This document shows positions 372-43,511 of a stretch of DNA of 64,000 nt, piece after piece. Numbering within the stretch: position 1 is the stretch's first letter; every line of letters begins with the position of its first letter. The translations under genes were made by a program, and so were the position numbers. A model generated the notes under the pieces. The model searched no databases. It was not told the DNA's origin and was given only the letters and a program-made list of their open reading frames with translations. The stretch is from positions 1 through 64,000 of the IMG/VR virus record IMGVR_UViG_3300042305_001773. One strand, written 5' to 3'.

Positions 372-411
372 TTTGGGAACCTCCATGTTCCTTATTTAGT
401 TAGGGATTAGA

Positions 412-1490: not shown

Positions 1491-2828
1491 TCAACGATTC
1501 ACGAGTTCGATGACGTGCTGCTTCATCATGTCCCGCAGCTGGCGCGAACGCTTTGTGCGAGCTTCTTTGACTTGGAACTTGCCAGCACGCTTAAAGTTTA
1601 CAACAGCACGACCGATGGCGTCTAAATCTTTAGCGGCCGCCATCTTCGGCTCTTCCATCGGCGGCATGGCGGCTTCAGGCGCAGCACCAGCTTCCGGCGG
1701 CATACCGCCTTCGGCGCCACCACCAGCACCGGACAGCGCCTGCAGTAAAGCTTCCGGCGGAATGCCCAGCTCTTCAAGCGCCATTGCCAGCTCTTGAACA
1801 GCTTCGTCTTCAGACGGCTCACCGGCAGCTTCGGGCGACGGTCCGCCTTCGGCACCCATCATGGCCTCAAGACCAGCGGGTGCGCCGCCAGCAGCAGCGT
1901 CATCAGCCGGAGCGTCGCTCATACCAGAAGCGGCGTCTTCAGGCGCAGAGTGATCCTCACCTTCGGTAGCTTCTTCTGTCGGATCAGCCGCGGCGGCCTT
2001 GGAGTTTACAAAGCCGATGAACAGGTCAGCCATCTCGTCAGCTTCGCGAATCGTGTTAGCGCACACGTCGCGAACAGACGCTTCAGCGGCTTCCTTGTCG
2101 AGACCAAGATGCGCGGCCAACTCGTAACCAGCTTTGAACGCGGCAGCCTTGTCGCTGCGAAGCGCGGCAAGATCAGAACCTTCGATCTTGCCATCGTTGT
2201 CGGTGTCGAGTTTGTGCTGGTCGCCCTTCAGCGCGCCGGTCGACTCGCTTTTTTCTTCAGACTTCTCTTCGGTCTTTTTCTTTAAAAAAGCCGGCATCTC
2301 AGCCGCCTTCTCATTGTTCAGCTTGCTGGCGCCGAAGTTGATGAGGTTAGCGAGAATGTCGTTACCGAGGGCGCCAGCGCGATCGCGGGCTTCCTTGAAC
2401 GTGACCGAGCTGTACTTCTCGCCGTCGTTAGCCTTGACCGGCGACGACGTGCCCGGGTCATCCTTATCGCCCTTGAAATCTTTTTCGTTGGAGGGGTCTT
2501 CGCCAGTGGCCTTGGCCGAGACGCCGATGTTCGTTTGAACTTCGTCTTGGCGGCCCTCTTGCGACATCTCCGGTGTGTTGTCTACAGCAAGAGCACCCTG
2601 CTGCTTCTTGACGTCAGCTTCATACTCGCTGGCGCGCGCACCGGTGCTGGCGTTTTGAACGCCGTTGTCAGCGCTAGTCGTCGGATGCGAAGAAGCACCT
2701 TGGTATCCACCCGGATCAGCGGGCACGGGACCGGCAGACTTCTCAGCCGCAGTCTTAACAGGGCTTTGCGCAATCTCGGCGGCGAGAGCGTTGAGTTGAT
2801 CGAACAGTGAACGTTGCATCCGTGCCAT
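1491..2828 (-). CDS. Putative scaffolding protein
   Basis: Acidic, Ala/Pro-rich, low complexity, many KxA motifs; lies between protease and capsid genes. Confidence 0.55.
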   Translation of the reverse strand: MARMQRSLFDQLNALAAEIAQSPVKTAAEKSAGPVPADPGGYQGASSHPTTSADNGVQNASTGARASEYEADVKKQQGALAVDNTPEMSQEGRQDEVQTNIGVSAKATGEDPSNEKDFKGDKDDPGTSSPVKANDGEKYSSVTFKEARDRAGALGNDILANLINFGASKLNNEKAAEMPAFLKKKTEEKSEEKSESTGALKGDQHKLDTDNDGKIEGSDLAALRSDKAAAFKAGYELAAHLGLDKEAAEASVRDVCANTIREADEMADLFIGFVNSKAAAADPTEEATEGEDHSAPEDAASGMSDAPADDAAAGGAPAGLEAMMGAEGGPSPEAAGEPSEDEAVQELAMALEELGIPPEALLQALSGAGGGAEGGMPPEAGAAPEAAMPPMEEPKMAAAKDLDAIGRAVVNFKRAGKFQVKEARTKRSRQLRDMMKQHVIELVNR

Positions 2829-2871: not shown

Positions 2872-4329
2872 TCATGTGACATAATTTTGCAATACACAGT
2901 GGTTTGCTGTCAACCAATTGTTTCCGTATTTCTCGCAGATGGCGGCGTAAGCAGCGATCTTATACAACGCGTAATGTTGCGCAAGAGCTGTTTCTGCTTT
3001 TCCACTCGCTTGCTTGTCGGACGGAAACTCAATTGCCCGGGCGTTACGAAGCGCAGCTAAGTATGCACGTTTCTCAACGCTGACGGGTAATACGCTATGT
3101 GTGTGGGCTACCTTTTCAGCCCACACGCGCACGCTTTGCGGCGCCGCATCAGCTGGAAAGTATACATTGTTTTCAAGCGTCGTGACGATATCTACGTCGT
3201 TAGCGAGCTTTGAAAACACGTTAGGCAGCGCATACGCAACTGCACTAACAAGTGTGGCGTTAGCTGACTTAACTGTCAACGCTAAAAAATCTCGCAGCGG
3301 CAAGATTACGCCAGCGTCGGCCAGTCCGCGTAACACCTCAGACATTTTAACAGAAGGGGTGTTATTTGTATCAATAGCCGGCTGTACTTCGCCGGAGCTG
3401 GCGAGCGCGGTCTGGGCCCAGTTACCGTTGGCGCCTGCATCCTTCTCCGCCTGCGCGAGCTGTGTTAACGCCTCTAACTGTGTCTGGACCCGCGCGGCGG
3501 GGGTACGGCCGAGGTCAAACCCAAGCGGCGCTGTAATACCCAGTTGCTCGGCTAACTCGGCGCCGGAAACGCAGCTACTTGAAGCGGCTTTTTGCAGTTG
3601 ACCAGATACATAGGCAATACGGTCGGCCGGGCGAAACACGTGGCTGATATCAAAAAACGTCGGATTCGGGTTATCGGCGTGTAGTACGTGGCCGTCTTCC
3701 AGCACCCGCCCCATGTTGTGCTTTAATCCGCCGGCCTTGCAGTGACCGCCGTTTTCAACCGAGTCGCAATATTCAGCGCGGGTCTTCGCCGTGTTGCCGC
3801 AAGATGAACACTTGTCGAACGGGATCTTGCAGGCCATCGACACGGCGATCTCTTTGTCGTTGGCCAGCTTTTCTAGTTCTTTGTCCGCGATCAACCCGCC
3901 GTTCCTGTCCGCGGCTTCTTTGGAGCCGTTTAGCGCCACGACTAACTCAATGCGTTTCATAGGTTCGTGATAGGCGCTGGCCTTTACGATACCGAAACTC
4001 TTAGCGGGGTTTTTGTTGGCGTGATCACGATAAAAGCGGGAGAATTTCTCAAACGTCTGGTGGTAGTTCCGGCAGCAGTCGCGCGTAAAACCGTCGCCGT
4101 TACGATTCGGGCCGTAGTCTTCCGTAGCGCCAATCGCGATCATGTGGACCGGTACTTCGTCTTTGGCAAACTTGATGTTTTCAAGCTTGTGCGCAAACTC
4201 GGCGCCGGCGCGTTTGACGAGGTCCTGCTTGTCGGCGCCGATAATACCGCGGCTAGATACTTTGATCAGCGCGGCAACGGGCTCGCTAAAATCCTGAGCG
4301 TGCGGCTGAATAACCTTGATCATGCTCAT
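2872..4329 (-). CDS. Putative prohead (capsid maturation) protease
   Basis: NRNGDGF, YRDHAN and VSMAC..DKCSSCG motifs (His/Ser catalytic candidates plus Zn ribbon); position upstream of scaffold and capsid. Confidence 0.65.
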   Translation of the reverse strand: MSMIKVIQPHAQDFSEPVAALIKVSSRGIIGADKQDLVKRAGAEFAHKLENIKFAKDEVPVHMIAIGATEDYGPNRNGDGFTRDCCRNYHQTFEKFSRFYRDHANKNPAKSFGIVKASAYHEPMKRIELVVALNGSKEAADRNGGLIADKELEKLANDKEIAVSMACKIPFDKCSSCGNTAKTRAEYCDSVENGGHCKAGGLKHNMGRVLEDGHVLHADNPNPTFFDISHVFRPADRIAYVSGQLQKAASSSCVSGAELAEQLGITAPLGFDLGRTPAARVQTQLEALTQLAQAEKDAGANGNWAQTALASSGEVQPAIDTNNTPSVKMSEVLRGLADAGVILPLRDFLALTVKSANATLVSAVAYALPNVFSKLANDVDIVTTLENNVYFPADAAPQSVRVWAEKVAHTHSVLPVSVEKRAYLAALRNARAIEFPSDKQASGKAETALAQHYALYKIAAYAAICEKYGNNWLTANHCVLQNYVT

Positions 4330-4331
4330 GT

Positions 4332-5315
4332 TTACTCTCCCGCGGACGAGCCGCCTAAACTGTTAAGAAGTGCCGGTACGCCAAGGGCGCCAAGAACTGG
4401 CAGGCCGATGCCAGCCAGCCGTCCACCAACTCGCGGCATACGACGAAAAGCCTGCTGTAGCTGCGCCGCTGTGAGCTTTTTGCCGGCGCCGCCAACGCCA
4501 GACTTACCCTCAGCCGCGATTGCGGCTAACACGTTAGCGACGTCATCAGCGTTGCGACCCAACGAGCCCCCGAGGAAATTACCGCGGGCCGCGCGTGTTG
4601 CTGTGTTGACGCGGCCGGGTACGGAAGCGGGCGTTGTCATACCAGCTGTTTCTAGCGGTAAACTGACGTCTCGCGGCACGTGGGCCGCCCCACGCAAACG
4701 ACGAATGCTGTTCAAAATTGTTTTTGTAAGCGACGGATCGTTTGTCGCTTCAGGCAGCTTGCCGATGTGTTTTGTCAGATTGTTTGTAATGCGCGTGGGA
4801 CCACTGTTTGCGCGCAACTGCTCAATAGTCGGCTTCAACTGTTTGGCAGTAGCGTCGCCGGAGTCAAGGAAACGGTCGAGTTTGCCGTACGCGTCTAGCG
4901 AGTTAGCGGCTTGGTGGCCGCCGTAAGCGCCAGCACCGGCACCAGCGAGATTTAACAGTGCGCCGGCGGACGAACCGTCTTGATTCTTAGCGGCAGCGAT
5001 AGCCGGCGGCGGTTCCGCGCCCGTCAGCAGCATGTTTTTTGCGGCTGTCGCGCCGAGACCGCCAATACCGCCCATCAGCGCATAATCAAGTATGGCGCGT
5101 CGTTTCTTCTTACCCTGTAGCGCACCGACGACGCCGCCAGCGCCAGCACCGATTGCAGCGTTCTGCAGATACGGGTTACTGAGAATCTGCGACAGGTCGG
5201 CCTGTTTGCCAAGAGCCGCCGCTACACTGGCCACCTTTTCGACCGCGGGGTCGGGTGTGCGGGTAGCAATTGCGGAAAGACCGCGAGCGAGTTCGTGTGT
5301 TTCGGTTGTTTTCAT
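4332..5315 (-). CDS. Gly-rich putative internal virion/ejection protein
   Basis: Glycine-zipper hydrophobic segments; EKVA and GKQA near N-terminus; no Cys seen. Confidence 0.45.
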   Translation of the reverse strand: MKTTETHELARGLSAIATRTPDPAVEKVASVAAALGKQADLSQILSNPYLQNAAIGAGAGGVVGALQGKKKRRAILDYALMGGIGGLGATAAKNMLLTGAEPPPAIAAAKNQDGSSAGALLNLAGAGAGAYGGHQAANSLDAYGKLDRFLDSGDATAKQLKPTIEQLRANSGPTRITNNLTKHIGKLPEATNDPSLTKTILNSIRRLRGAAHVPRDVSLPLETAGMTTPASVPGRVNTATRAARGNFLGGSLGRNADDVANVLAAIAAEGKSGVGGAGKKLTAAQLQQAFRRMPRVGGRLAGIGLPVLGALGVPALLNSLGGSSAGE

Positions 5316-8020: not shown

Positions 8021-10402
8021 TTACGCGTTAGCGATAGCGCCAAGATCAATATCCTGCGCGGCTTCTTCGGGATACGGCTCGATGGTCTTCTGCTTCAGGA
8101 AGAGGATAACGTCGCCAAGCATTTCAAACGCGTTGCGCAGCGAGTCTTCCAGTTCCGGCATGTCGGCTTTGCCGTAACGTTCGGCAAACCGGTCACCGTG
8201 CCAGTAGAACATAAACAAAATGCGGCCTAACTTATCGAGGCCCTTGGTGAGTTCGCCCATGTAACGATCGACAAGCGAGTCGTCACGTACAGCGCGCAAC
8301 ATAGCTCCTACCATCGCCGTGTCGAACACCTCGCGCTGGCCGCTCTGGGCGGCGTCGATTACGGAGCGCACGTCCTTTTGATCGAGCAGCGTGTTCGGGT
8401 TGTAAACGCTGCGGTCGGTCTGGCTAGCGCTCATACCCGGCACCTGCATCGCGGTATCAATACCGAGTTGCGTGGGGACGTTGGTGCCCATAATGCTTTC
8501 GCCGCCCATCACCGGGCCCGGATCTGTCGGCGCAGATGGCGCGCCGTTGATCATCATCGGGCCGCCGTACGGGTCGGCGTACTTAACTCGGCACTCAAAC
8601 TTGCGCTTGGCGGCCGCCTGTTTCAGGATCTCGCGCGCAGCATCTTCGCGCAACCCGTGGTGTTCCACTAGCGTAACGAGCGCTTTGATCGGGCTCAGGT
8701 TGGCTTCTTTGTTAATCGTTACCGACGAGCCGTTGTGATAAACCGTCAGCGCGGCGGTCTTCTGCATAAGAGCCAGCTGCGCGTCAACGAGGTTACCGGG
8801 CATCAGGGCCGGCGGATCGCTCTCGCCACAGCCGCAGGCGCCTTGATCTTCGGCGTTTTCGGCGTCGTCCTCACCTTTGGTGACCTTGAGCAGCTTGAAA
8901 CCCTCTGGTACATAGATGTCGCCCATGCTCGCGCGGAGGCTGGCACCCTTTTTGCCGTTGAGGTGAATCCGCACGCCGTCACGCCACTTGTCGTAGTTCA
9001 GCGGATCGGTGTAGCAGCAGGCGCCGATAGAGCCCTTCGGCGGATACTTTGAGTGATCTTCGAGATGCGCTTCGTAAACAGTGCTGCCGTTGCTGTCGCC
9101 GTACTCTTTGATCACGCGGAACGGCGCAGTAGTATCGCCGCGCTTGCTGAGCGCAATGTAACGAGCATCCTTGCTGGGGACGCTGTTGGCTTCCGGCAGG
9201 CTGTCAAACCACTTGTCGAACTCTTCGCCTTCGATACGGGCGAGAGCAAAAACTTGGTCAGCACGAGTGTTTAACCAGTTACGCGCGCCATCAACACGCA
9301 CAACAGTGATGAAGTTTTCACGCTTAGCGGCGCCTTGCGGATGCACGGCAACGTAACAACGCTCGATGTTGCCCGGTTTGACCAGAATCTCGTACAGGCC
9401 GCTTTCGGTGGGGTTAAACAGCTTCTTCTCGACCTGAATGTGATACGGAACGGATACGTTGTCGCGGTCACGCTGGTCTTGGATGAGCACACCGTCGCGC
9501 AGCAGCTTTTCCTGATCTTCTTCGCTGTGGCCGACCGGAGCTTTGGTCTGAATCGTGACGTCGTACGTGATAACCGTTAGGCCCTTAACAGACGCCGGCT
9601 CCTTGGGCGCTTCGGACAGCACGCTGGCAATCTTGGTGCTGGCGGCAACTTCGCGGGCGGCGGCGTCAGCAATAGCTTGCTTCACGATATCTAAACCGTG
9701 AAATTCTTCGATTGCGGCGGCCATCTGCGGCGCGTGCTTGCAGGAGTTAATAAGCGCGCCGATCATTTCTCGCCCGGCCTGCTTCAGAAACGTCTTCAGG
9801 TTTAGCGCGTCGCCCATTTCTTTGAATGCCTGCGCTGTGTTTAACGTGGCACTCTTGGCGAGAGCAGGCATCGCAGCCGTCATCATCTCTTTGAGCGTTG
9901 GCTGGGCAGAGCCGAACTTAGCCGGGCTGCGCGAAAGCTGCGTGAAATCCGGCTGGCGCTGGCCGAGACCCGCTAGATTGCGTTGTACGCCGCTACCCAG
10001 AATGTTGGGTTTGCGGTTGATCAGATAGTTAATCCAGTTTTCCTTGAGCGGCACGAACATGTCCTGATTTTTGATATACAGGAGTTCGTGACCCTTGAGG
10101 TCGCCGTTCAGGAAGAATACCGGCGCATACAGCCAGTTCGAGCCCACCTTGAACGCAAACACGCCGACCGCCTTGGTGTTTTCTCGGTTGCGGTCGAGGA
10201 GCTGAAAGCCAATTTCGTGGTCAAGCAGCTTAGGCGCCGAATCGCGCAGATAGGCGTGCGCCAGATTGCTAAACGACTGCTCGAAAGAGGTGTCGTCGCC
10301 TTTGCCGCCTAAATCGGCGTATTTGGTCTGGGTGCGGTCATACGACTGCATCACCTTCAGCCAATGCTTAACAGACGACTCTTTCGCTTTTTTGTTATAC
10401 AC
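8021..10402 (-). CDS. Large putative virion protein
   Basis: GTG start at 10402 after GGAGG; KYA, KSA, KQA, KIA and KTA motifs. Confidence 0.55.
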   Translation of the reverse strand: MYNKKAKESSVKHWLKVMQSYDRTQTKYADLGGKGDDTSFEQSFSNLAHAYLRDSAPKLLDHEIGFQLLDRNRENTKAVGVFAFKVGSNWLYAPVFFLNGDLKGHELLYIKNQDMFVPLKENWINYLINRKPNILGSGVQRNLAGLGQRQPDFTQLSRSPAKFGSAQPTLKEMMTAAMPALAKSATLNTAQAFKEMGDALNLKTFLKQAGREMIGALINSCKHAPQMAAAIEEFHGLDIVKQAIADAAAREVAASTKIASVLSEAPKEPASVKGLTVITYDVTIQTKAPVGHSEEDQEKLLRDGVLIQDQRDRDNVSVPYHIQVEKKLFNPTESGLYEILVKPGNIERCYVAVHPQGAAKRENFITVVRVDGARNWLNTRADQVFALARIEGEEFDKWFDSLPEANSVPSKDARYIALSKRGDTTAPFRVIKEYGDSNGSTVYEAHLEDHSKYPPKGSIGACCYTDPLNYDKWRDGVRIHLNGKKGASLRASMGDIYVPEGFKLLKVTKGEDDAENAEDQGACGCGESDPPALMPGNLVDAQLALMQKTAALTVYHNGSSVTINKEANLSPIKALVTLVEHHGLREDAAREILKQAAAKRKFECRVKYADPYGGPMMINGAPSAPTDPGPVMGGESIMGTNVPTQLGIDTAMQVPGMSASQTDRSVYNPNTLLDQKDVRSVIDAAQSGQREVFDTAMVGAMLRAVRDDSLVDRYMGELTKGLDKLGRILFMFYWHGDRFAERYGKADMPELEDSLRNAFEMLGDVILFLKQKTIEPYPEEAAQDIDLGAIANA

Positions 10403-10483
10403 GGCCAGCCTCCATGCTGCGCTCAAAATTAGACACAGCATTAATTTACTGCGTCGAAGTCCCTATATCCTACAAAAACAGGC

Positions 10484-34516: not shown

Positions 34517-36781
34517 TTACAGGTCGGCGAGATCGCTCACGCGGCCGGACTGAAGCGGTTCAACACCGCCGGCCGGAGCTTGATTCGGCTGCGGCGATTG
34601 CGGGCCGTAGTAGAACGGGTTTCGTACGTTGGGCACGTATGACCGCGCTGTTTGAGCGGCATTCGTCACGCCACGACGGACGTCATTGGCTGTATTTACT
34701 ACAGTGTTTCGCGCCGTGCCGTAGGCTGTACCGACCGCGTCGCCCATCGCAGATCCGGCGTCGTGAACGCCTTGGCCGATAGCGCGCGGAACAGCCATCG
34801 CGGCTTGTCCGGCCTGCTGTAAACCAGCGCCGGCGCGGTTGGCCATGTCCGAACCAAACTGCTGCGCAGAGCTAACATAAGGATCCACGGCCGGCGCTGT
34901 GGCACGATATGCGCCGTAGGTAGCTCCAGCCGCAATCGGCATGGCCACGGCTGTGCGAGCGGCGTTCATGGCTGTGCTGCCCGGAACCTGTGTGCCGGCC
35001 CAGCGCGCGACGTTTCCAGCGCCGCGAGCGACTTGCCCAGCGCCGTACATACCAGCGCCAGTCGCCGCACGAATACCGCCGCCGACAGCGTTACCCACAC
35101 CGCCGCGCATCATTTGTTGTGCGCCGCCGGTCGCCATCTGAGCGCCGCGATTTACAGCCGCATTACCAAGTTCGCCGGCCGCCGCGCCGGTAGCGCGACT
35201 TACTGTGCGAGCGCCGCCAGCAACGGCACGACCGCCGCCACGAGCCATCGCGCCGAGCCCTTTGGCGCCAGCGCCGATTAAACCACTCACGAGCCCAGCA
35301 GCTTCTTTTTCGCCGTGCGGCTGTTGCGCGTTCGCTGCGTCTGTCGGTACGGGGTTGGGCGCCGAGCGTTGCTTGTCGTCGATGATCTTGTTACTGCCGC
35401 GCGCACTCGGTGTGCAGCTCATCTCGGTCTTGCCGCGAGGCGCACTGGAGACAGCTTTCTTTTCTTTCTTGTCTTTCTTGTCTTTCTTTTTCTTGCTGCC
35501 GCCCGGTCGGCACGAATCGTTGCTGTACGGCTTCTTGCCCGGCACCGGTTCATAACCAGTCCAGCACCGGCCCGCTGCTTTACCGAACTCCAGCGCCGAG
35601 CCCTGCTTCATACCGTTCGTGCTCGCATTCTGCAGCTGCGGCATAAGCTGTTCAATGATATTTCTATTGTGGGTCAAAAAGTCATACATCTGCCGCCCCT
35701 GTCCGCTGCTCATGTTAGGATCGCGCCCCATGAGCATTGTCGTGCCAAACTCAGGGCTCAACTGGCTCAGCGCGTTGATCTGATCCATCGGGTTCCCGCC
35801 ACCACCGCCAAGCATGCTGTACAACCCGTTGGCGCCCTGACCGACCATGCGCCGGGGCCCGTCACCAAACATGCCGGCACCCGCGGCGCCAAGACCAGCG
35901 GCGCCGAGACCCAGTGCGCCCATACCGGCACCCAAACCAGTGTTGCCGCGCCCGCCCATGAACGCACCAGCTAGCGCCAGCGGAACACCGGCGCCGATAG
36001 CGTAGCGGGCTTCGATCGGCAGGCTGTTCCACATGCCCATCAAGCCGCCGTTGTTGGGATTTGCTTCAGCGTGCTGCGCCATAGACATCTGCGTATTCAT
36101 CTGCTGCGCATCGACGTTTTCCGGCGTCGGTTCGCTGCCAATGCCCATGGCTTTTCCGGCGTAGTGCATGCCAGCAGCACCGGTACCAGCACCCACAGCG
36201 AGATTTAGCGGATTGCGCGCATTCGTCATCGCCGACGAACCGCCGCCCATCCACTCGGGCAGATTCTTCGCCGCAGCCTGTGTCCGGCCGATTGTCTGAT
36301 CGCCGAAACGCTGGCCGGCAGCACGCGGATCTAACCCGCGCACGCCCTGCACCATGTCGTCAGCCTTGTTAAGCCCGCGACGCATGACATTCATTGTGCC
36401 GCGGCCGAGCCCGCCGACAGCGTCTACAGCTTGGCCTGCGAGTCGGCCGGGTGCGCCGTGATACAAAGAAGCGGCCTGACCTTGCGCAGCGCGGGCAGCA
36501 GCATCGAGCCGGCTGGGCCCTGTCGGTTTTGCCGTGAGCGGCACTGCTTTGTAACGATCCTTGAGCGGAATAGTCAGCGGATCAACAACGTTTTGTTGCA
36601 TGCCGCGCTGATAGCCGCGCGTGGCGCTCGTGCCGCGATTGACGAGCTGTTTTCCGCCGCGCACCGCATCATCGGCAAGACCTTTTACGGCTTTAGTACC
36701 CGCGCCAAGCAAGCCGCTGAGTAATTTATTGGCTTCTTTTTCGTGGCCGCCGATGTGCTGACCAAACTCATATGCGTTCAT
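34517..36781 (-). CDS. Gly-rich putative virion polyprotein
   Basis: MNAYEFG..EKEA leader; repeated KEA-xxL.SGL.GAG modules; CWTGY..C micro-domain. Confidence 0.6.
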   Translation of the reverse strand: MNAYEFGQHIGGHEKEANKLLSGLLGAGTKAVKGLADDAVRGGKQLVNRGTSATRGYQRGMQQNVVDPLTIPLKDRYKAVPLTAKPTGPSRLDAAARAAQGQAASLYHGAPGRLAGQAVDAVGGLGRGTMNVMRRGLNKADDMVQGVRGLDPRAAGQRFGDQTIGRTQAAAKNLPEWMGGGSSAMTNARNPLNLAVGAGTGAAGMHYAGKAMGIGSEPTPENVDAQQMNTQMSMAQHAEANPNNGGLMGMWNSLPIEARYAIGAGVPLALAGAFMGGRGNTGLGAGMGALGLGAAGLGAAGAGMFGDGPRRMVGQGANGLYSMLGGGGGNPMDQINALSQLSPEFGTTMLMGRDPNMSSGQGRQMYDFLTHNRNIIEQLMPQLQNASTNGMKQGSALEFGKAAGRCWTGYEPVPGKKPYSNDSCRPGGSKKKKDKKDKKEKKAVSSAPRGKTEMSCTPSARGSNKIIDDKQRSAPNPVPTDAANAQQPHGEKEAAGLVSGLIGAGAKGLGAMARGGGRAVAGGARTVSRATGAAAGELGNAAVNRGAQMATGGAQQMMRGGVGNAVGGGIRAATGAGMYGAGQVARGAGNVARWAGTQVPGSTAMNAARTAVAMPIAAGATYGAYRATAPAVDPYVSSAQQFGSDMANRAGAGLQQAGQAAMAVPRAIGQGVHDAGSAMGDAVGTAYGTARNTVVNTANDVRRGVTNAAQTARSYVPNVRNPFYYGPQSPQPNQAPAGGVEPLQSGRVSDLADL

Positions 36782-36928
36782 GAGTGTTCTCTTCCTGTTT
36801 TGTTATTTGTGTCGGCGCTGGGTAATCACACCGGCCGCCTTCGCAACATGTTTCCAGAATAATGCGGCAAAACGGACAAACTAGCTTGCCGCGAATCTCA
36901 ATTCCCGGGCTTTCGCACTGCGGGCACA

Positions 36929-37561
36929 TTACCACTCAAACTCCACTGGCTTGCGCGTCTTGTAGCTGAAGTCGACATCGAGCGGCGACTGAAACCGTAC
37001 GTTGGGAAGCGGCAGCTTGGGGGCTACCGCCGCTGTACCGCCAAGTAACCCAGCAGCTGCAAGTGTCGGTACGCCAAGCGGCGCGTCGCCTACCGCGCGC
37101 ACGCCCTTGCCAACAGCCTGCAGCCCTTCGCCGGCCAAGTTCACGGCATGACCAGCGCCGCGCACAGCCGACCCGCCGAGTCGCATGCCGTGGCCAAGCA
37201 CGCCGCGAATGTCTCGCGTGGTGCGTGTGCTGCCGCTGCCAATATTGTTAATCATGCTCTTGCCGGTCGTCTGCATGCCGCGGCCGGTACCCAACAGCAG
37301 GCCGCCAAGTCCAGTCGAGTTCCCAAGGCTGGTGCCGTCTTTAGGGCTAAATGTGGGCCGCGCCTTGGAGCCAATGATCTCGCCAGCGCCCTGCAAACCG
37401 CGCCCGAAACCCTTGACGATATGCTGCGAGCCGCGATTGATCGTCTGCGCGCCGCGACCAATACCAGACGCCGCGTTGGCAAGCCGCGCGACAATCTTTT
37501 CAAAGCCGGCGCCCTGCTTTTCTAGCTGGCCGACGTTGTATCCAAACTCATACGCGTTCAT
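36929..37561 (-). CDS. Gly-rich putative virion protein
   Basis: MNAYEFGYNVGQLEKQG leader. Confidence 0.6.
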   Translation of the reverse strand: MNAYEFGYNVGQLEKQGAGFEKIVARLANAASGIGRGAQTINRGSQHIVKGFGRGLQGAGEIIGSKARPTFSPKDGTSLGNSTGLGGLLLGTGRGMQTTGKSMINNIGSGSTRTTRDIRGVLGHGMRLGGSAVRGAGHAVNLAGEGLQAVGKGVRAVGDAPLGVPTLAAAGLLGGTAAVAPKLPLPNVRFQSPLDVDFSYKTRKPVEFEW

Positions 37562-37581
37562 ACTTCCTGCTCCTTTTGATA

Positions 37582-38268
37582 TTAAAAGCTGGCCAGCGGG
37601 GTGTTGGCCTGTCCGCCGCCGTAGATGCCGGGGCCGCTAGGCTGGAACTGTTGTGCCGGCTGCCCGCCGCCAATGCCCATCGCGCTCATGCCCAAACTTC
37701 CGGCTGCGCCGGCAATCGGCAGAGCAATCGGGGCAGACTGCAGCGGATTTTTAATTCCGGCGTTATACATTTTGCCCATCATGCCCGGGTTTTGAACTGT
37801 CGGCATTACCTTCTGAATACCACCGCTGAGCGCGCGATTGGCGTTCGTGACCGCGGTGGTGCCCTTGGTCAAAAACTGCTGCGAACCGCGGGTAAGCGCT
37901 TTGCCTGTGTTCGTAAAACCGGCGCGGGCTAGCTGCTTACCGCCGCCAGCAATCGCGCGGCCGACGCCCTTGGCAGCAAAACCCCATCCGGGAATGAAAC
38001 TCAGCGCGCCGCTCAAGCCAGACATACCTGCGTCCATAAGTCGGCCGTTATACAGATGGCGCGATACGTCATTAATCGCTGTGGGTACGCCCGTAAACGG
38101 ATTCGAATACAGCGCCGTGTCAGCAACCAACCCGCGCTGCGTCGGGTCGCCTAGCGGGTTGATTTGACCCATTGCTGACCCCGTACCAAGTACTGCATCG
38201 CCAAGGGCGTTCTGCGCACGCTTCTCTGTCGCCAGCCCGACGCGATATCCAAACTCATACGGCTGCAT
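37582..38268 (-). CDS. Gly-rich putative virion protein
   Basis: MQPYEFGYRVGLATEKRA leader. Confidence 0.6.
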   Translation of the reverse strand: MQPYEFGYRVGLATEKRAQNALGDAVLGTGSAMGQINPLGDPTQRGLVADTALYSNPFTGVPTAINDVSRHLYNGRLMDAGMSGLSGALSFIPGWGFAAKGVGRAIAGGGKQLARAGFTNTGKALTRGSQQFLTKGTTAVTNANRALSGGIQKVMPTVQNPGMMGKMYNAGIKNPLQSAPIALPIAGAAGSLGMSAMGIGGGQPAQQFQPSGPGIYGGGQANTPLASF

Positions 38269-38298
38269 ATTAAAACTCCGCGCCAACGCGATGACGGA

Positions 38299-38835
38299 TT
38301 ATTTGTTTGAGCATTCCCGACTGCACCGAAATACCAGCGAATAGCGTGTATCCGCGACTGGGAGTATTTCATGGTTCCAATTGTAGCGAATTTCGTCGCG
38401 CAGTTGTACAAGACTTCGGGGCGGCAGTTCTACGGAAAACGCACGCTTCTGTAACGTAAATACCATCGTGGCCGGCGTAAGTAAGCTTAATACTGTGATT
38501 ACCGCGCCGCCTTCCGGTAAATCCACGTGCGGTTTGATCACCTGTTTTTCCAAATATTGATTCAGCGTAATGGAGTCCGGGCGCTGTTCTACAAGGTTCT
38601 GCGCCACAAGCCTGTCCAGCACAAACTGAAAATGTTCTGGAATCGTGTCCGACAAAATATCATTGGGATACGGAACTGGCGAACCCCAACGCTGAATCAC
38701 ATTTCGTGTACGGACGTGTCGGCGTGTGTGCCCTGTTGGAATACCGGCCTCGATGTGCGCGAGTAATACCTGCTCCTCAGCCGGAGACAAAAACTCGTTT
38801 ATTAGCGTGAGCGTGCTGACGTCGGATGGAAGCAT
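38299..38835 (-). CDS. AlkB-family 2OG-Fe(II) oxygenase
   Basis: NQY, HVD, WNHEI and RYSLVFR motifs. Confidence 0.88.
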   Translation of the reverse strand: MLPSDVSTLTLINEFLSPAEEQVLLAHIEAGIPTGHTRRHVRTRNVIQRWGSPVPYPNDILSDTIPEHFQFVLDRLVAQNLVEQRPDSITLNQYLEKQVIKPHVDLPEGGAVITVLSLLTPATMVFTLQKRAFSVELPPRSLVQLRDEIRYNWNHEILPVADTRYSLVFRCSRECSNK

Positions 38836-38850
38836 GGCTGGCGCTGACGT

Positions 38851-39225
38851 TTATTTGTTTGGCTTGACCGGGCAGCGACGATTGTTAAGCATTTCTCGGC
38901 GAAACGCTGCCGCCGTTTTGCGTACGTTCTTGTTGTAGCAATGATAGTTAAAAAAGTGCCCAAACATAAAGTGACACGGCGACTCACACAACGTCATGAG
39001 ATTGCTTTCAGTCAATTCCAACTCCGGCGCAACACTCACCGGAAAAACATGGTGCACGGCAAGGTTTTTTGTCCGCCCGCAAACTTCACACGCCGGATGT
39101 TTTTTTAAATGTTCGGCTCTGACTCGCCGCCACTCGCCTGCTCGCTGCCGCAGATCGAGGATGTATTTGGGGCGCAACCAGAGCGGCAGGCCGCGGTAGA
39201 AATAGCCGAAAAGTTTTGCAAACAT
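38851..39225 (-). CDS. HNH endonuclease
   Basis: CEVCG..VHH...NLMTLC..CH..GH. Confidence 0.85.
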   Translation of the reverse strand: MFAKLFGYFYRGLPLWLRPKYILDLRQRAGEWRRVRAEHLKKHPACEVCGRTKNLAVHHVFPVSVAPELELTESNLMTLCESPCHFMFGHFFNYHCYNKNVRKTAAAFRREMLNNRRCPVKPNK

Positions 39226-39347
39226 GGCCGGACTTTCGTGCTGCCGCGAACATACGGCGGATCATAGGGGCAGTTTTTACATTTTTTGCCGCAGCACATA
39301 CGCTGCGCCAGAAGGATGTCGCGAGACAAGGGCTGATACTTACTCAC
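39105..39347 (-). CDS. Small Cys-rich protein (CCG..C..CPY)
   Basis: MCCGKKCKNCPY; tail overlaps the HNH gene. Confidence 0.5.
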   Translation of the reverse strand: MSKYQPLSRDILLAQRMCCGKKCKNCPYDPPYVRGSTKVRPCLQNFSAISTAACRSGCAPNTSSICGSEQASGGESEPNI

Positions 39348-39603
39348 ACTCGTTGTACTTCACGACAAGATACGTCCCGAGAAATGCGCCCAACGCCAAC
39401 GGAACCACATAGAGCGGATTCTTGGAGTACGAGATCACGCCGTATGCGCCGAGGCTATACAAAAAAGAACTCACCACGGCGGCATTGATTGGTTGCCGCT
39501 TGCTGACGCAGATCACGTACATGGCATACAAGATATCAATGACCACATAGGTCACGAAGATTACGCCGGCCGTGCCCCAGTGAAAGTCTTGCCACATGTT
39601 CAC
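39340..39603 (-). CDS. Membrane protein
   Basis: Three TM segments. Confidence 0.6.
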   Translation of the reverse strand: MNMWQDFHWGTAGVIFVTYVVIDILYAMYVICVSKRQPINAAVVSSFLYSLGAYGVISYSKNPLYVVPLALGAFLGTYLVVKYNECE

Positions 39604-39604
39604 C

Positions 39605-39958
39605 TCACTTCACTGTTGCGGCGTGAGTGAACTTCTTCTCGTAGTGGGAGTAAATTTCCGCAAACGCAACGCCCCACGCAGCGTCATGGGCTAACTTATT
39701 AAACGCTTCGTCCGTCGTGGCTTCGTCAAGCCGATGGTTCCACGCCCGCGCATGTGCCCACTCGTGGATCAAGACGTCCATGGCGCGGGATTCATCCAGA
39801 CTCTTGTCGATCTGGATGTGGAACTTCTTGCCCTGTTTCCAGCAGCGGCCCTCTAATTTAGATAGCTTTACCCGGCGTACGCTCACGGGAAAAGCCGCGG
39901 GACACTCGTTTTTGAGCATCCGCAGGAGGGCTTGATAATATTTAAAACGAGCCGCCAT
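39605..39958 (-). CDS. SprT-like HExxH metallopeptidase
   Basis: LIHEWAH...HDAAW. Confidence 0.65.
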   Translation of the reverse strand: MAARFKYYQALLRMLKNECPAAFPVSVRRVKLSKLEGRCWKQGKKFHIQIDKSLDESRAMDVLIHEWAHARAWNHRLDEATTDEAFNKLAHDAAWGVAFAEIYSHYEKKFTHAATVK

Positions 39959-40033
39959 GCTCTATCCTCCTGAAGGGCGTCCTTGCCACAACGGAGTGAT
40001 TATACTTGAGCCGGCGGAGTTTGGCGGCAGCGA

Positions 40034-41218
40034 TTATTTCGCGTTATTTTGCAGCTGCGCTAACACAGCCGCGGCGCTTTCTTTAACTTCCTCGTCACCC
40101 GAGTCTTCCGACTTTTCCTCGGACTTTTCTTCTTTTTCGTCGCTCTCGGGCTTTTTCTTTTTCTTACCGATACTGGAGCCGATGTTACTGCCCAGATGCG
40201 CGCCGGCACCCAGACCAGCAGCGCCGCCGGCTAACAGGCCAATACCGGCACCCGGACCGCCGCCCAGCGCGCCGCCAGCGAGAGCGCCCATGATGCCACC
40301 GCCAGCGCCGCCAGCCAGCCCACCAATACCACCGCCCGCGACACCCCCCAACGTAGAAAGCAGCGACGATTGTTTTTGCGCGCCACGAAGCCGCATGGGC
40401 TCGGGTGTGCCGCTCAAAAATCGCAGCGCCGGGGCCATCATCTGTTCAAACGACGACGAGCCGTCGCGGTCGAGACCGGTGAAAACGGTTGGTCCAAGTT
40501 TTGGTTTTTGCAGCGGCGTTTTATTTACAGGCGCGGCGGGTGTTGCCTTTGGTTTGTTAAGCGATCGGTAGGCTTCGCTCGCGGCCAGCGCCCCGCTGGC
40601 CCCAATAGTGCCGCCAATAGCCGGATAAAACACGTCATCACTGGCTAACGTTTTTGCCGCAGTGCCCAATCCTTTGCGGATGCTATTTAAAACTGACGAG
40701 GCGGCCCCGGCTTCTTTATTTTCCCACGACGGCTTGCCAATGGCAGCGCTGGCGCCGGCATAGCCCAGCCCGGCACCACCGACCGCGCCTGTCGTACCGC
40801 CGCGCACAATCGCGTTGCGCAGATACGCGTCGGTGTACGGCGACAGCGAGCCCGGGCTGCGAATCGGGACCTTCTTGCCGCCGCGTGACATCGTCCGACC
40901 ACCGCGCTGTACAAACCGCTTGAGCGCGTCGGCTAATTGCGCTGCGCTCGGGCCAAAGAGTGTTTTGCCGATACGAGGACTTGCCGCCGCGAGCGCAAGA
41001 GCCCCCAGCGCTCCGCCTACACCACCGCCAATCATGCCAGCACCTGTGCCAGTGCCTTTGACAGCCCCACGGCCCAGTCCTTCCATGCGGTGTCCAGACG
41101 GCGACGTGACTGCGCCCAGACCAGCGCCCACACCCGCTGTGATCGGCAGCGTCACGAACGCCTGCTTGCCGACCTGTTTCCCAACCTGCATGCCAAATTG
41201 TTCGGGCGTAACACTCAT
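40034..41218 (-). CDS. Glycine-zipper putative virion polyprotein (alternative start 41344)
   Basis: PEQFGMQVGKQVGKQA leader; long GxxxG tracts; KEA and KQS sites. Confidence 0.55.
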   Translation of the reverse strand: MSVTPEQFGMQVGKQVGKQAFVTLPITAGVGAGLGAVTSPSGHRMEGLGRGAVKGTGTGAGMIGGGVGGALGALALAAASPRIGKTLFGPSAAQLADALKRFVQRGGRTMSRGGKKVPIRSPGSLSPYTDAYLRNAIVRGGTTGAVGGAGLGYAGASAAIGKPSWENKEAGAASSVLNSIRKGLGTAAKTLASDDVFYPAIGGTIGASGALAASEAYRSLNKPKATPAAPVNKTPLQKPKLGPTVFTGLDRDGSSSFEQMMAPALRFLSGTPEPMRLRGAQKQSSLLSTLGGVAGGGIGGLAGGAGGGIMGALAGGALGGGPGAGIGLLAGGAAGLGAGAHLGSNIGSSIGKKKKKPESDEKEEKSEEKSEDSGDEEVKESAAAVLAQLQNNAK

Positions 41219-41321
41219 GCGAGCACCTGTGGCTTGAATATGGTTTTGAAGTTTGCGCGTAGTCACGTGCTGCATGATCTTTTCAAACAGCTTGCGCCGC
41301 GACAGCGCCAACTCCGTTAGT

Positions 41322-43511
41322 TTACTTACTGGAATCGGCGGCATCGTCGTCGTCCAGAATGCTTTTGCTGGCTTGGGGTTTGGCGTCTGGATATTTTAAC
41401 AGCCGCCGCTTCTTCTTTGAAAGCGGGCGTTTGGGCGGCGTTAATTTGAGCGTTTGAAACACAGCGCTCGCCTTTTCTTGCACTTCTTTGTCTTCTGTTA
41501 ACTCTCCTCGCCGCCGCTTGAGATACTTCTTTAATTCCTGCTCCTGATAGGCTTGGAGCATAGTTTTTACTTTGTCAGACCGGGTGCGCGCAACTAACTT
41601 CGCGGGGTCAATCGCCCAGTGCTGCAGCGCCCAGCCTCGTCTTGGCGTAGGATTAGTCATAAACGGCCCGCCATGACGCGCTTTGAAGCTCGCCCAGCGC
41701 TTGATCTGGCGCGCATCTTCGTCGGGAAGCCTGCGGCCCGAATTGTAGTTCTGGTACCACTCCAGCCAGCCCTTCGGGTCATGTTCTGTCACCCATTCCG
41801 GCTTCCATTCGCCTAAACTCGCGAGCCGTGGGCCCTCTTTTTCGTATAACGACTTGTACACACCCATGCGATGCAGCTGGCCGGGCGTGAAGTCAGGCTG
41901 AAACTCAGGAAGATCCGCGCTCTGCTTCTCCTGCTCTCTTTGCTTGCGGTATTTATCGCCCTCGTCTTGCAGGATCTTGCGGAAGATCTCGTTGAGCTGT
42001 TCTTTCTCGGCGGTAAGGTGTTCAAGTACTTCGTCACCTGTGCGCTCGCGCTTGTACCCCATGAGCTTGCCGATGAAGCTCGGGTCTTGGCTGGCACTTA
42101 GATATCTTTGCACTTGGACGTTCTTGAGTTCTTCAGGGAGATCTCGATGCGAGTCAAAGCGCAGACCACGACCACGAGCTTGCTGGCTGCGCGACTCATG
42201 CCAGTGCGGATCTAAAAGCTGAATGAGACTGGTGCCCTTGGTAGACAAACCCTCGGCGCCAGCAGGGCCAATTAAGAGCGCCCGGAGCTTGCCTTGGTTG
42301 TATGCGTCCACAGCGGCTTGGCGCGCCTTTGAGCTAACGCCGCCATGGAAAAACGCATGCGGGATCTTGGCTTTCTCTAGACCAGCTGCGTAGGGCGCCA
42401 AGCCAGAGTCAATGAAGTTGGAATAGATAATCGCCTTCTTGCGCTTGTCTTCACCCAGTGTCTTCTGCAGGTTCTGAAACGCGGCTTGTAATTTGGCGCT
42501 CTGCTGAAACGCCTTGGCCGGATCTTTGTCGGCGCGGAACGGCTGCGTGGATAAGCTCACTTGGCGCAGGCCCGTGAGAAAGCTATTTAACTTGGCCAGC
42601 TCGTCGCGGGACAACGGAAACTCTTGATCCAGCTTCCACAAAAACCCCGGCGGAATCTTCGTGCGAATAGCTTTTTGAATCTTGTCCTGCGCGTTGGACA
42701 ACGGTACGCGCACGACCTCTTCTTTAACATTTACACCTTCGGGCGTTTTGCTGGGCTGGTAATCTACTTTGCCTGCAAGCAACTGCCGCAGTTCTTTTTC
42801 GTTCTTGACGACTGGCTTGACGCCGGGCTTCACGCCACGCAGCCAACCAAACAAACCCGGCCGCACGGTTTTGTAGTCGATATACCGCTTCTCGAATTCT
42901 TCCGGCGTAATCTCTTTGTTATGGAGCATCGAGAGCAGATTGGCGAGATCCGTAGGCGAATTCGTGATCGGCGAACCAGTAAGTAACATTAAACGCTTCG
43001 CCTGCGCGGCGGCTTCAGCAGCTCCGGCCGAACTCGCGCTCCCCGGATTACGGAGCCTGTGCGCCTCGTCCATGATCAGCGTGCTGGGCGGCTTTTGAAA
43101 CTTCTTGCCCAGCGCCAGCCCCGTGTAGCTCATGATCTCGGGGTTAGAGTTCTGCGTGAACTTCTTGATTTCTTTGTCGAAATTACCCCTGAGACTAGCC
43201 GGGACTACCACGCCATACTCTTCGCCGTCTTGCTTCTTCGCTTCTTCAGCGGCGGCCAGTGAAGACAGCGATTTACCAGAACCTAAGCCGTGATAGACCA
43301 GTAAGCGCGGATCAGTGGTAGAAATACGGTCGGCGATTCTCTGCTGATGTTCCTGCAGCTGGATCTCGGGAAGAAGTTCAGCTTGTTTTTCGCTGCCGTT
43401 TTGGCGCTCGGAATTCCCGGCTGCCAAATTGGCCACTTTGTGCCATACGCTATCGGGCAGTGCGGATGGCTTGGGAGTGCTGCCGAGAATGCTATTTATT
43501 TCTGCGCTCAT
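41322..43511 (-). CDS. SF2/SNF2-like helicase of D6/D11 type with C-terminal W-rich domain
   Basis: LLVYHGLGSGKS, DEAH, TGSP, GAEGLS, DPHW..SR..QARGRGLR.DSH..LP. Confidence 0.88.
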   Translation of the reverse strand: MSAEINSILGSTPKPSALPDSVWHKVANLAAGNSERQNGSEKQAELLPEIQLQEHQQRIADRISTTDPRLLVYHGLGSGKSLSSLAAAEEAKKQDGEEYGVVVPASLRGNFDKEIKKFTQNSNPEIMSYTGLALGKKFQKPPSTLIMDEAHRLRNPGSASSAGAAEAAAQAKRLMLLTGSPITNSPTDLANLLSMLHNKEITPEEFEKRYIDYKTVRPGLFGWLRGVKPGVKPVVKNEKELRQLLAGKVDYQPSKTPEGVNVKEEVVRVPLSNAQDKIQKAIRTKIPPGFLWKLDQEFPLSRDELAKLNSFLTGLRQVSLSTQPFRADKDPAKAFQQSAKLQAAFQNLQKTLGEDKRKKAIIYSNFIDSGLAPYAAGLEKAKIPHAFFHGGVSSKARQAAVDAYNQGKLRALLIGPAGAEGLSTKGTSLIQLLDPHWHESRSQQARGRGLRFDSHRDLPEELKNVQVQRYLSASQDPSFIGKLMGYKRERTGDEVLEHLTAEKEQLNEIFRKILQDEGDKYRKQREQEKQSADLPEFQPDFTPGQLHRMGVYKSLYEKEGPRLASLGEWKPEWVTEHDPKGWLEWYQNYNSGRRLPDEDARQIKRWASFKARHGGPFMTNPTPRRGWALQHWAIDPAKLVARTRSDKVKTMLQAYQEQELKKYLKRRRGELTEDKEVQEKASAVFQTLKLTPPKRPLSKKKRRLLKYPDAKPQASKSILDDDDAADSSK

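What the first reader, a model, noticed from the sequence alone, without database searches (positions are those of the whole stretch)
34517..41218. Shared N-terminal leader (EFG...G...EKxA): putative capsid-targeting signal
Seen: otherwise dissimilar proteins start MNAYEFGQHIGGHEKEA, MNAYEFGYNVGQLEKQGA, MQPYEFGYRVGLATEKRA and MSVTPEQFGMQVGKQVGKQA. Related segments occur in 18975 (AFKLGF), in the scaffold-like protein (AFKAGYELAAHLGLDKEA) and internally in 34517 (ALEFGKAA). Inference: a portable ~17-aa packaging tag removed at KxA, analogous to the T4 capsid targeting sequence. It would let new genes become injected cargo.
Basis: partly seen in the sequence, partly recalled or inferred. Interest (0 to 1): 0.8.

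Follow-up and report, generated by a model that had tools for sequence, protein, structure and literature searches.

The report
Shared N-terminal leader on phage proteins
Three neighbouring genes of an uncultivated 205-kb lake phage encode unrelated, basic, glycine-rich proteins that all begin with the same ~17-residue peptide, which is most plausibly a sorting or pro-peptide like the capsid-targeting sequence of phage T4, though nothing here shows packaging or cleavage.

Summary
The leader is real, but in three proteins rather than four. A (37582-38268), B (36929-37561) and C (34517-36781), all on the minus strand, start M-x-[P/A]-[Y/F]-E-F-G-x-x-[V/I/L]-G-x-x-(x)-E-K-x-A. A leader HMM scores them 34-39 bits in the six-frame window and nothing else above noise. 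Their bodies share only composition; profile comparison aligns residues 1-20 alone. Codons vary synonymously, so selection acts on the peptide. The leader recurs in the same gene cluster of more than 15 related ~200-kb freshwater phage contigs, and on further body families. The fourth case (D) is internal: 42 conserved, coding residues precede it, and it fits the HMM weakly.

The (E)-K-x-A end is the most durable element. C-family relatives keep it at residue 3-16 behind N-terminal peptides of 2-15 residues. EK.A is about three times enriched in this proteome, most of all in the head-gene module at the window start. A-D are basic and the scaffold-like protein is acidic. T4 IPII/IPIII start MKTYQEFIAE, and some C orthologues start MTPQEFIA.

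The T4-like reading is therefore plausible. Virion location, cleavage and the protease are unproven, because no cultured relative, proteome or RNA data exist.

The parts
34517..36781 (-). Gene C, 754 aa. It is basic (+31), 17% Gly, and starts with the leader MNAYEFGQHIGGHEKEA. It has a conserved core (about residues 240-490) with a glycine-zipper stretch, a Cys/Lys 'CW' module and a variable C-terminal extension.
   Evidence: (34.5 bits)
36731..36781 (-). Leader of C (residues 1-17), ending in E-K-E-A.
36929..37561 (-). Gene B, 210 aa, basic (+12), 20% Gly, with the leader MNAYEFGYNVGQLEKQGA. In 19 family members M1, F6, G7, E14 and K15 are invariant and A17 nearly so.
   Evidence: (37.7 bits)
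37508..37561 (-). Leader of B (residues 1-18).
   Evidence: The low-confidence AF2 model has a helix at 3-15 and a break at 16-20.
37582..38268 (-). Gene A, 228 aa, basic (+10), 18% Gly, with the leader MQPYEFGYRVGLATEKRA. The leader is the best-conserved 18-residue window of the family.
   Evidence: 39.3 bits
38215..38268 (-). Leader of A (residues 1-18).
40034..41344 (-). Gene D, 436 aa (not 394), basic (+23). Its ~60-residue N-terminal region is conserved and is joined to bodies of very different length (297-682 aa) in relatives.
41159..41218 (-). Internal leader-like motif of D (about residues 43-62, MSVTPEQFGMQVGKQVGKQA). It is a weak match and is not N-terminal.
   Evidence: 6.2 bits, E 0.58
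35489..35596 (-). Internal ALEFGKAAG followed by the RCWTGYEPVPGKKPYSNDSCRP + Lys-run module of C (about residues 396-431).
35300..35317 (-). Second E-K-E-A site of C (HGEKEA, residues 489-494), at the border between the conserved core and the variable C-terminal extension.
39605..39958 (-). Small SprT-like HExxH metalloprotease gene. It sits beside the leader cluster in every lineage examined. Whether it acts on the leader is unknown.
1..386 (-). 5' part of the major capsid protein gene, which runs off the window start. The full 313-aa orthologue is at L055:13946-14887.
   Evidence: feature score 0.98 and 208 shared features to capsid-protein clusters
1491..2828 (-). Scaffold-like protein, 445 aa, acidic (net -32), Ala/Glu/Pro-rich, with conserved AAEKSA and NNEKAA sites.
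   Evidence: The assignment rests on position and composition only.
2872..4329 (-). 485-aa protein at the 'prohead protease' position, between the portal-like and scaffold-like genes.
   Evidence: Language-model lead to Peptidase_S77/S78/S80 clusters. There is no Pfam, PDB or hhalign support, and the AF2 model is too poor to search.
4332..5315 (-). 327-aa basic, glycine-zipper protein inside the head module, with a conserved P-A-V-E-K-V-A near its N-terminus. Its composition resembles that of A-D.
8021..10441 (-). 806-aa portal-like protein. The assignment rests on size and position only.
   Evidence: no family match

Best explanation
The leader is an N-terminal sorting peptide or pro-peptide. 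A, B and C are basic, glycine/alanine-rich, largely unstructured proteins made with a common ~17-residue N-terminal handle. Its invariant core is F-G-x-x-x-G, preceded by an aromatic residue. This core would dock the proteins to a common partner during assembly, most plausibly the acidic scaffold/core or the inner face of the HK97-type capsid in the procapsid. The handle ends at a conserved (E)-K-x-A junction, where it would be trimmed by a maturation protease. This would leave the mature basic proteins inside the head with the DNA, as happens with T4 internal proteins.

Shown: the leader exists, it is N-terminal, selection acts on the protein, it is modular on unrelated bodies, the junction motif is conserved, EK.A is enriched in head-module proteins, and there is a head module with a capsid protein and an acidic scaffold-like protein.

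Inferred: the docking partner, virion location, cleavage, the identity of the protease, and injection.
For: - Three N-terminal copies score 34-39 bits against noise of <= 6 bits.
- Only residues 1-20 are alignable between the families.
- Synonymous variation occurs at every conserved codon.
- The leader is conserved in the syntenic cluster of more than 15 related contigs and in more distant lineages.
- It sits on additional unrelated bodies and has been lost from some orthologues.
- In the C family, [ED]K.[AST] is found at residue 3-16 in 27 of 32 representatives, behind peptides of 2-15 residues. The other 5 keep K-x-A.
- EK.A occurs 26 times against 7.6 expected from shuffles.
- In a slightly larger protein set it occurs 30 times against 3-16 for permuted motifs, and 13 against 0-5 in the head module.
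- The sites are conserved in orthologues of the scaffold-like, 141-, 327-, 459- and 129-aa head-module proteins.
- A-D carry net charges of +10 to +31, against -32 for the scaffold-like protein.
- The capsid protein is identified and there is a protease lead.
- The T4 IPII/IPIII propeptide is MKTYQEFIAE. Its targeting determinants are Tyr4 and Phe7 (PMC9026906). C orthologues start MTPQEFIA...
- Precedent exists for conserved N-termini on diverged head paralogues in SPN3US (PMC5694885).
Against: - There is no proteomic, transcript or structural evidence that A-D are virion proteins or are processed. No RNA run was listed, and there is no cultured relative.
- The leader genes lie 24-30 kb from the head module, among enzymes such as PhoH, a 2OG oxygenase, HNH and an SNF2 helicase.
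- The leader occurs only in one tandem cluster, so shared descent with retention of the N-terminus explains part of the pattern.
- Some orthologues lack the leader but keep EKEA, so the leader is not needed for whatever the mature protein does.
- E is not invariant in family A (TKRA, MKQA).
- The known T4 and phiKZ protease rules do not fit.
- The protease assignment failed every sequence and profile test.
- In families B and C other regions are better conserved than the leader.
- EK.A is also a helix-friendly sequence, and shuffling does not control for that.
Confidence: 0.4

Rival explanations
1. The leader is a permanent N-terminal helix used for association and is not removed. The F-G-x-x-x-G core would be a GxxxG-type packing surface. 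Through it A, B and C would bind each other or a common partner, for example the glycine-zipper stretches or the Cys/Lys 'CW' module of C. The K-x-A would simply be the end of that helix.
For: - A K-x-[A/S] element precedes 134 of 141 CW modules in hundreds of otherwise different proteins. In some it is preceded by EFG (AYEFGSKVAR-CW, AAEEFGAKLAR-CW).
- In L050 the leader runs straight into a CW module (MNPYEFGYVIGEKTA-RCW).
- C and D carry leader-like segments internally.
- AF2 draws the leader of B as a helix (low confidence).
Against: - The pre-EKEA peptide of the C family varies from 2 to 15 residues and in sequence class (EFG type, QEFIA type, none) while the rest of the protein is kept. 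This is unusual for an integral structural element.
- No model or co-variation supports a contact.
Confidence: 0.25
2. The leader is a substrate or sorting tag for a process unrelated to the capsid. One option is recognition by the syntenic SprT-like metalloprotease or the nearby trypsin-like protease. Another is delivery of glycine-zipper proteins to the host membrane or to an intracellular phage structure.
For: - An SprT-like HExxH gene sits beside the leader cluster in every lineage seen.
- A trypsin-family protease with a hydrophobic N-terminus lies 2.4 kb upstream of gene D.
- A, B and D have weak TM-like glycine-zipper stretches.
- The neighbouring genes are enzymes rather than structural genes.
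Against: - The synteny is inherited within one clade, so it is not independent evidence.
- The leader has no hydrophobic core or other feature of Sec, Tat or lipoprotein signals (direct reading).
- This reading leaves the EK.A enrichment in the head module unexplained.
Confidence: 0.2
3. The leader is only a relic of tandem duplication. A, B and C would be old paralogues whose low-complexity bodies diverged beyond recognition, with the N-terminus kept for a trivial reason such as efficient translation start or stability.
For: - The genes are adjacent, on the same strand and of the same composition.
- The 205-kb contig has no copy of the pattern outside the cluster.
- Uncorrected BLAST finds compositional similarity between the bodies.
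Against: - Synonymous sites vary freely, so nucleotide-level or initiation-level selection is unlikely.
- The leader is kept at 64-68% identity across relatives, and in family A it is the best-conserved window.
- It occurs on further body families at other genomic positions, for example next to the actin-like gene in L038.
- The junction motif outlives the leader.
Confidence: 0.1

Closest known systems
Capsid targeting sequence (CTS) of phage T4 internal proteins IPI, IPII, IPIII and Alt
   Same: - It is a short (10-19 aa) N-terminal peptide shared by otherwise unrelated, basic proteins.
- An aromatic residue at position 4 and Phe at position 6/7 are conserved. T4 has MKTYQEFIAE, with Tyr4 and Phe7 as targeting determinants (PMC9026906).
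- Some C orthologues here start MTPQEFIA.
- The genes lie among non-structural genes.
- The scaffold is acidic.
- It has been proposed as an evolutionary route for packaging new cargo.
   Different: - Packaging or cleavage has not been shown here.
- The Tyr-Phe spacing differs by one residue.
- The end motif is (E)-K-x-A, not L/I-x-E.
- The capsid protein is a small (313 aa) HK97-type protein with a separate scaffold, not gp23-like.
- A gp21-type protease is not demonstrated.
- The leader contains an F-G-x-x-x-G core that T4 lacks.
N-terminal propeptides of phiKZ/SPN3US/201phi2-1 head and ejection proteins
   Same: The phage is a jumbo phage. Diverged paralogues keep identical N-termini, as in SPN3US gp53/gp54 where the first 15 residues are the same (PMC5694885). 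The propeptides are proposed to target proteins into the prohead and are removed at a Glu-containing motif.
   Different: Those propeptides are mostly over 100 residues and are cut at S/A/G-x-E by an S80 protease. The leader here is 17 residues and the rule fits only some copies. This phage is unrelated to phiKZ-like phages: its nearest cultured RNAP relatives are Salmonella phage Arash and Vibrio phages, at about 32% identity.
Encapsulin cargo-loading peptides (recalled from memory; a lead, not a test)
   Same: A short Gly-containing peptide (of the ...V-G-S-L-K/R-G type) docks unrelated cargo onto the inner face of an HK97-fold shell. The leader's V-G-x-L-E-K stretch has the same character.
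   Different: Encapsulin peptides are usually C-terminal and are not removed. No binding pocket or homology was tested here.
N-terminal leader of staphylococcal phage 80alpha capsid and scaffold proteins, cleaved by the host L27 protease Prp (recalled from memory)
   Same: Several assembly proteins share a short N-terminal leader that is removed at a fixed motif.
   Different: That leader mimics a host ribosomal protein and is cut by a host enzyme. A scan of one genome from each of 185,579 bacterial and archaeal species found the present leader only on a binned contig of the same phage.

Membership tests
T4-type capsid targeting sequence | Short N-terminal peptide common to proteins whose mature parts are unrelated | tested here: met
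   hhalign aligns only residues 1-20 between families A, B and C, and the bodies give probability < 7%. Composition-corrected BLAST gives E >= 0.057.
T4-type capsid targeting sequence | Carrier proteins are packaged inside the head | not testable with these tools
   There is no cultured relative, no proteome, and no RNA run was listed. The only indirect signs are the basic, Gly-rich composition and a compositionally similar protein inside the head module.
T4-type capsid targeting sequence | Peptide removed by the prohead protease at L/I-x-E | tested here: not met
   The sites here read Q-L-E, G-H-E and A-T-E followed by K-x-A, and family A also has T-K-R-A and M-K-Q-A. Cleavage itself cannot be tested.
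T4-type capsid targeting sequence | Phage encodes a gp21-type (S77) prohead protease and a scaffolding core | tested here: inconclusive
   54 of the 100 nearest named language-model clusters are Peptidase_S77, and others are S78/S80. Pfam, the PDB and hhalign against T4 gp21 (probability 0.5%) give nothing, and the AF2 model is unusable. An acidic scaffold-like protein is present.
T4-type capsid targeting sequence | Sequence similarity to MKTYQEFIAE | tested here: inconclusive
   The aromatic residue at position 4 and the E-F pair are shared. QEFIA is identical in C orthologues of L050 and in P0028/P0038. The match is too short to establish homology.
phiKZ-type head propeptides | Cleavage motif S/A/G-x-E and an S80 protease | tested here: inconclusive
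   The motif fits A (A-T-E) and C (G-H-E) but not B (Q-L-E). S80 appears only among the language-model neighbours.
Sec/Tat/lipoprotein signal peptides | Positively charged n-region, hydrophobic h-region of 7-15 residues, and an A-x-A or lipobox site | tested here: not met
   The leader has no hydrophobic stretch and carries Glu at position 5. No TM-like window overlaps residues 1-20.
Double-glycine bacteriocin/RiPP leaders | Leader ending in G-G/G-A/G-S, with an adjacent C39 peptidase/ABC exporter | tested here: not met
   The leader has no G-G end, and no such transporter is found among the Pfam results for the neighbourhood.

The most novel reading that the evidence does not exclude
A large, abundant clade of ~200-kb freshwater phages uses a swappable N-terminal cargo-loading peptide (aromatic-E-F-G-x-x-x-G ... 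(E)K-x-A) to load a changing set of basic, glycine-rich proteins into the capsid. The K-x-A junction would be a general processing or junction signal, shared with head-core proteins and with a widespread, undescribed family of modular Cys/Lys-rich phage proteins. The Y/Q-E-F-I/G core would be functionally equivalent to the T4 CTS, extending that mechanism far outside the T4 family.
Probability: 0.25. Interest if true: 0.7.

Novelty: new variant of a known kind. Interest (0 to 1): 0.5.

Why it matters
If the leader is a capsid-loading tag, three things follow. It would give a sequence rule for recognising packaged, and possibly injected, proteins in a very abundant but uncultivated group of lake phages. 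It would show that the T4 solution for recruiting new cargo arose, or persisted, in a very different capsid system. And it would offer a short portable tag for loading foreign proteins into an HK97-type capsid. If the leader is instead a permanent docking helix, it defines a new small interaction motif shared by low-complexity phage proteins. Either reading can be tested with a handful of constructs.

Tried and rejected
- Family assignment of A-D. Pfam and PHROGs searches gave nothing, and neither did profile searches of families B and C against the PDB.
- Search of GenBank phages by DNA and by protein gave no match.
- Homologue search for B found only 15 unnamed clusters.
- AF2 of the 485-aa protein (pLDDT 49.5) and of B (pLDDT 55) were both too poor for fold searches, so none was run.
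- Testing the protease idea by Pfam on 22 orthologues, hhalign against T4 gp21 and a homologue search gave no support. The homologue search found 1182 clusters, and the 120 listed were all unannotated. The single 6-residue hhalign match (VSSRGI against VSSRGL of gp21) is treated as chance.
- PHROGs on the capsid-side genes gave no hits.
- Contexts of remote CW-module proteins: the contigs were short, and only PhoH synteny was recovered.
- No shared promoter motif was evident upstream of the leader genes and the head genes.
- Literature searches for Salmonella phage Arash and for DUF6321 found nothing.
- The idea that the conservation is at nucleotide level was rejected because of the synonymous variation.
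- A host-protein mimic was rejected. The scan of one genome from each of 185,579 bacterial and archaeal species found the leader only on a binned contig of the same phage.
- Read laying was not used. Only DNA runs were listed, and they would not bear on the question.

Full report
**Source and layout**

The window is the first 64 kb of a 205-kb IMG/VR contig. All recognisable genes lie on the minus strand. The contig belongs to a large clade of ~200-kb phages from lake and freshwater metagenomes. No GenBank phage is similar at DNA level. The nearest cultured relatives of its bacterial-type RNA polymerase subunit are Salmonella phage Arash and some Vibrio phages, at about 32% identity.

**Observation**

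- Three consecutive minus-strand genes begin with the same peptide: A (37582-38268, 228 aa), B (36929-37561, 210 aa) and C (34517-36781, 754 aa). The peptide is M-x-[P/A]-[Y/F]-E-F-G-x-x-[V/I/L]-G-x-x-(x)-E-K-x-A.
- Each start has a Shine-Dalgarno-like sequence upstream.
- In relatives a stop codon lies 5-11 codons upstream with no other Met, so the peptide is the true N-terminus.
- A leader HMM built from 40 distinct leaders and run on all six frames gives 39.3, 37.7 and 34.5 bits for A, B and C (E <= 8e-10). The next hit scores 6.2 bits.
Its reading frame opens at 41344. The 42 residues before the motif are conserved as protein in nine relatives, with third-position changes, and again in the more distant L031. 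The motif in D is therefore internal and a weak match (E 0.58).

**Are the bodies unrelated?**

With composition correction, BLASTP finds nothing between the leader-less bodies (E >= 0.057). Without correction only compositional similarity appears. Profile-profile comparison of the ortholog families gives less than 7% probability for the bodies. Full-length profiles align over residues 1-20 only (A-B 95.9%, B-C 81%). The proteins do share character: 17-20% Gly, 10-16% Ala, net charge +10 to +31, and weak glycine-zipper, TM-like stretches.

**Level of selection and distribution**

- Every conserved codon of the leader varies synonymously among copies (TAT/TAC, GAA/GAG, all four GGN), so the peptide is what is selected, not the DNA.
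- A degenerate DNA pattern for the leader, scanned over IMG/VR, hits the source contig only three times, all in this cluster. It hits the syntenic cluster in about 15 related contigs.
- The scan also finds the leader in more distant lineages, on bodies that cluster apart from A, B and C. These are a 219-aa family (L035/L043/L045), a 225-aa family (L026/L036), and a 95-aa protein next to the actin-like gene in L038.
- Some orthologues lack the leader. C in L043 starts MTEKEAV.., C in L038 starts MNQFEKEA.., and the B-like protein of L043 has a different N-terminus.
- One genome from each of 185,579 bacterial and archaeal species contains the leader only on one binned contig of the same phage.

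**The junction motif**

An exhaustive profile search with family C returned a graded series of relatives. Among 32 N-termini, 27 carry [E/D]-K-x-[A/S/T] at residue 3-16, and the other five keep K-x-A. The peptide in front ranges from two residues (MTEKEA), through short aromatic stubs (MTQFEKEA, MSHYHYDFEKEA), to the full EFG leader or a QEFIAALEQQ-type leader. The junction is thus older and more constrained than the leader.

EK.A is over-represented in the window's proteome. It occurs 26 times against 7.6 in shuffles. In a slightly larger protein set it occurs 30 times against 3-16 for permutations of the same letters. The excess is concentrated in the head-gene module (13 against 0-5). The sites are conserved in orthologues of the scaffold-like, 141-, 327-, 459- and 129-aa proteins while their flanks vary. 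Two cautions apply. EK.A is helix-friendly, and these proteins are Ala/Glu/Lys-rich helices.

**Head module**

The window start holds the 5' end of a capsid protein gene (1-386). The full 313-aa orthologue matches capsid-protein clusters with a feature score of 0.98 and 208 shared features. The other genes, none of which matches Pfam or PHROGs, are:

- two small proteins;
- an acidic (net -32) scaffold-like protein (1491-2828);
- a 485-aa protein (2872-4329);
- a basic glycine-zipper protein (4332-5315);
- three more unknowns;
- an 806-aa portal-like protein (8021-10441).

The N-terminal 260 residues of the 485-aa protein resemble prohead protease clusters (S77, S78, S80) in language-model space. 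Every sequence-based test was negative, and the AF2 model was too poor to use. A protease is therefore plausible but unproven.

**Comparison with known systems**

T4 IPII and IPIII start MKTYQEFIAE, as read from the T4 record. This ten-residue capsid targeting sequence is sufficient to load foreign proteins. Tyr4 and Phe7 matter for targeting, and residues 8 and 10 for cleavage (PMC9026906; PMC3012670). SPN3US gp53 and gp54 keep identical first 15 residues although the proteins share only 34% identity (PMC5694885).

The present leader has the same logic and a similar aromatic-E-F core. Some C orthologues even read MTPQEFIA. But the spacing, the F-G-x-x-x-G core and the (E)K-x-A end differ, and the known protease rules (L/I-x-E, S/A/G-x-E) do not fit all copies.

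**Mechanism**

The best-supported reading is a sorting peptide or propeptide. It would dock basic cargo to the acidic scaffold/core or to the capsid interior, and would be trimmed at (E)K-x-A. I put this at about 0.4. The rivals are:

- a permanent association helix (0.25);
- a tag for another process, such as the syntenic SprT-like protease or membrane delivery (0.2);
- a duplication relic (0.1).

The permanent-helix rival draws on three observations. A K-x-[A/S] element precedes 134 of 141 copies of the widespread Cys/Lys 'CW' module. EFG-type helices precede some of these copies. In L050 the leader runs directly into such a module.

**Verdict**

Its key claims (packaging, cleavage, injection) remain untested and cannot be tested with the available data. 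The concept is a known one, so this would be a new variant in a new phage clade.

Noticed in passing
window 35489-35596 (C residues ~396-431); P0045-P0165: The segment R-C-W-x-G-Y-E-P-V-P-G-K-x-P-Y-S-x-D-S-C-R-P followed by a lysine run is a mobile ~40-residue module. The family-C profile search returned 513 cluster representatives at E <= 1e-3, most of them matching only this module. In the listed hits the module sits at the N-terminus (28), inside (52) or at the C-terminus (61) of otherwise different proteins, often together with DUF6321 and Cys-rich modules. It matches no Pfam family and no GenBank phage.
   Followed up: partly
P0096, P0105, P0115, P0162: Multi-module relatives repeat a short helix-like element (..I-Q-x-L-A-K-L-A-A-[G/S/D]) in front of each module (CW, Cys-rich, DUF6321). 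This looks like a recurring junction or processing element in polyprotein-like phage proteins.
   Followed up: no
window 40034-41344 and L001-L014: Protein D has a well-conserved ~60-residue N-terminal region joined to bodies that differ greatly in length and sequence between relatives (297-682 aa). This is a second 'constant head, variable body' design in the same cluster.
   Followed up: partly
L055:14922-15311 (129-aa gene just after the capsid gene): This small Ala-rich protein has three conserved EK.A sites at residues 27, 61 and 92 (kept in 19/23, 23/23 and 18/23 orthologues). The first reads Y-F-F-E-K-L-A, like the leaderless C N-termini (..D-F-E-K-E-A). It is a candidate core protein cut into small peptides.
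   Followed up: partly
window 18975-19334: The protein starts M-D-V-T-E-K-E-A-F-K-L-G-F. It resembles the leaderless C-family starts (MTEKEA..) rather than the EFG leader.
   Followed up: no
window 28782-29816: An actin-fold protein matches Pfam Volactin over its full length (E 8e-62). In L038 a 95-aa leader-bearing protein lies directly upstream of the orthologue.
   Followed up: no
window 10484-12364 and 13344-17747: These two large genes resemble bacterial-type RNA polymerase beta/beta' subunits. The nearest cultured phages (Salmonella phage Arash, Vibrio phages D181/D148/D69) are only about 32% identical.
   Followed up: partly
window 38299-39958: Four small genes separate D from A: SprT-like metalloprotease, an 85-87-aa membrane protein, an HNH endonuclease and a 2OG-Fe(II) oxygenase. 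The content of this gap differs between relatives. The SprT-like gene is always present beside the leader genes.
   Followed up: partly
window 36768-36935: A 55-aa ORF with two CxxC pairs (zinc-ribbon-like) overlaps the end of B and the start of C. Distant relatives have a cupin-like gene at this position instead.
   Followed up: no
window 2872-4329, residues 24-29: The nearly invariant V-S-S-R-G-I matches V-S-S-R-G-L (residues 139-144) of T4 gp21, and this is the only hhalign match (probability 0.5%). It is probably chance, since it lies N-terminal to all conserved histidines.
   Followed up: partly
window 22493-23320, 25487-27325, 43767-44615, 52220-53455: Other enzymes in the window are a matrixin-type metalloprotease with a peptidoglycan-binding domain, a NUDIX + 2H-phosphoesterase + DUF5661 fusion, a trypsin-family protease with a hydrophobic N-terminus, and an Ntn-hydrolase-like protein.
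   Followed up: no
L094 (ENA contig) and window 33750-36781: The C-like protein directly upstream of PhoH, with a 2OG oxygenase further upstream, is kept even in a remote relative whose C-like protein has no EFG leader (it starts MTPVQALVQQ..).
   Followed up: partly
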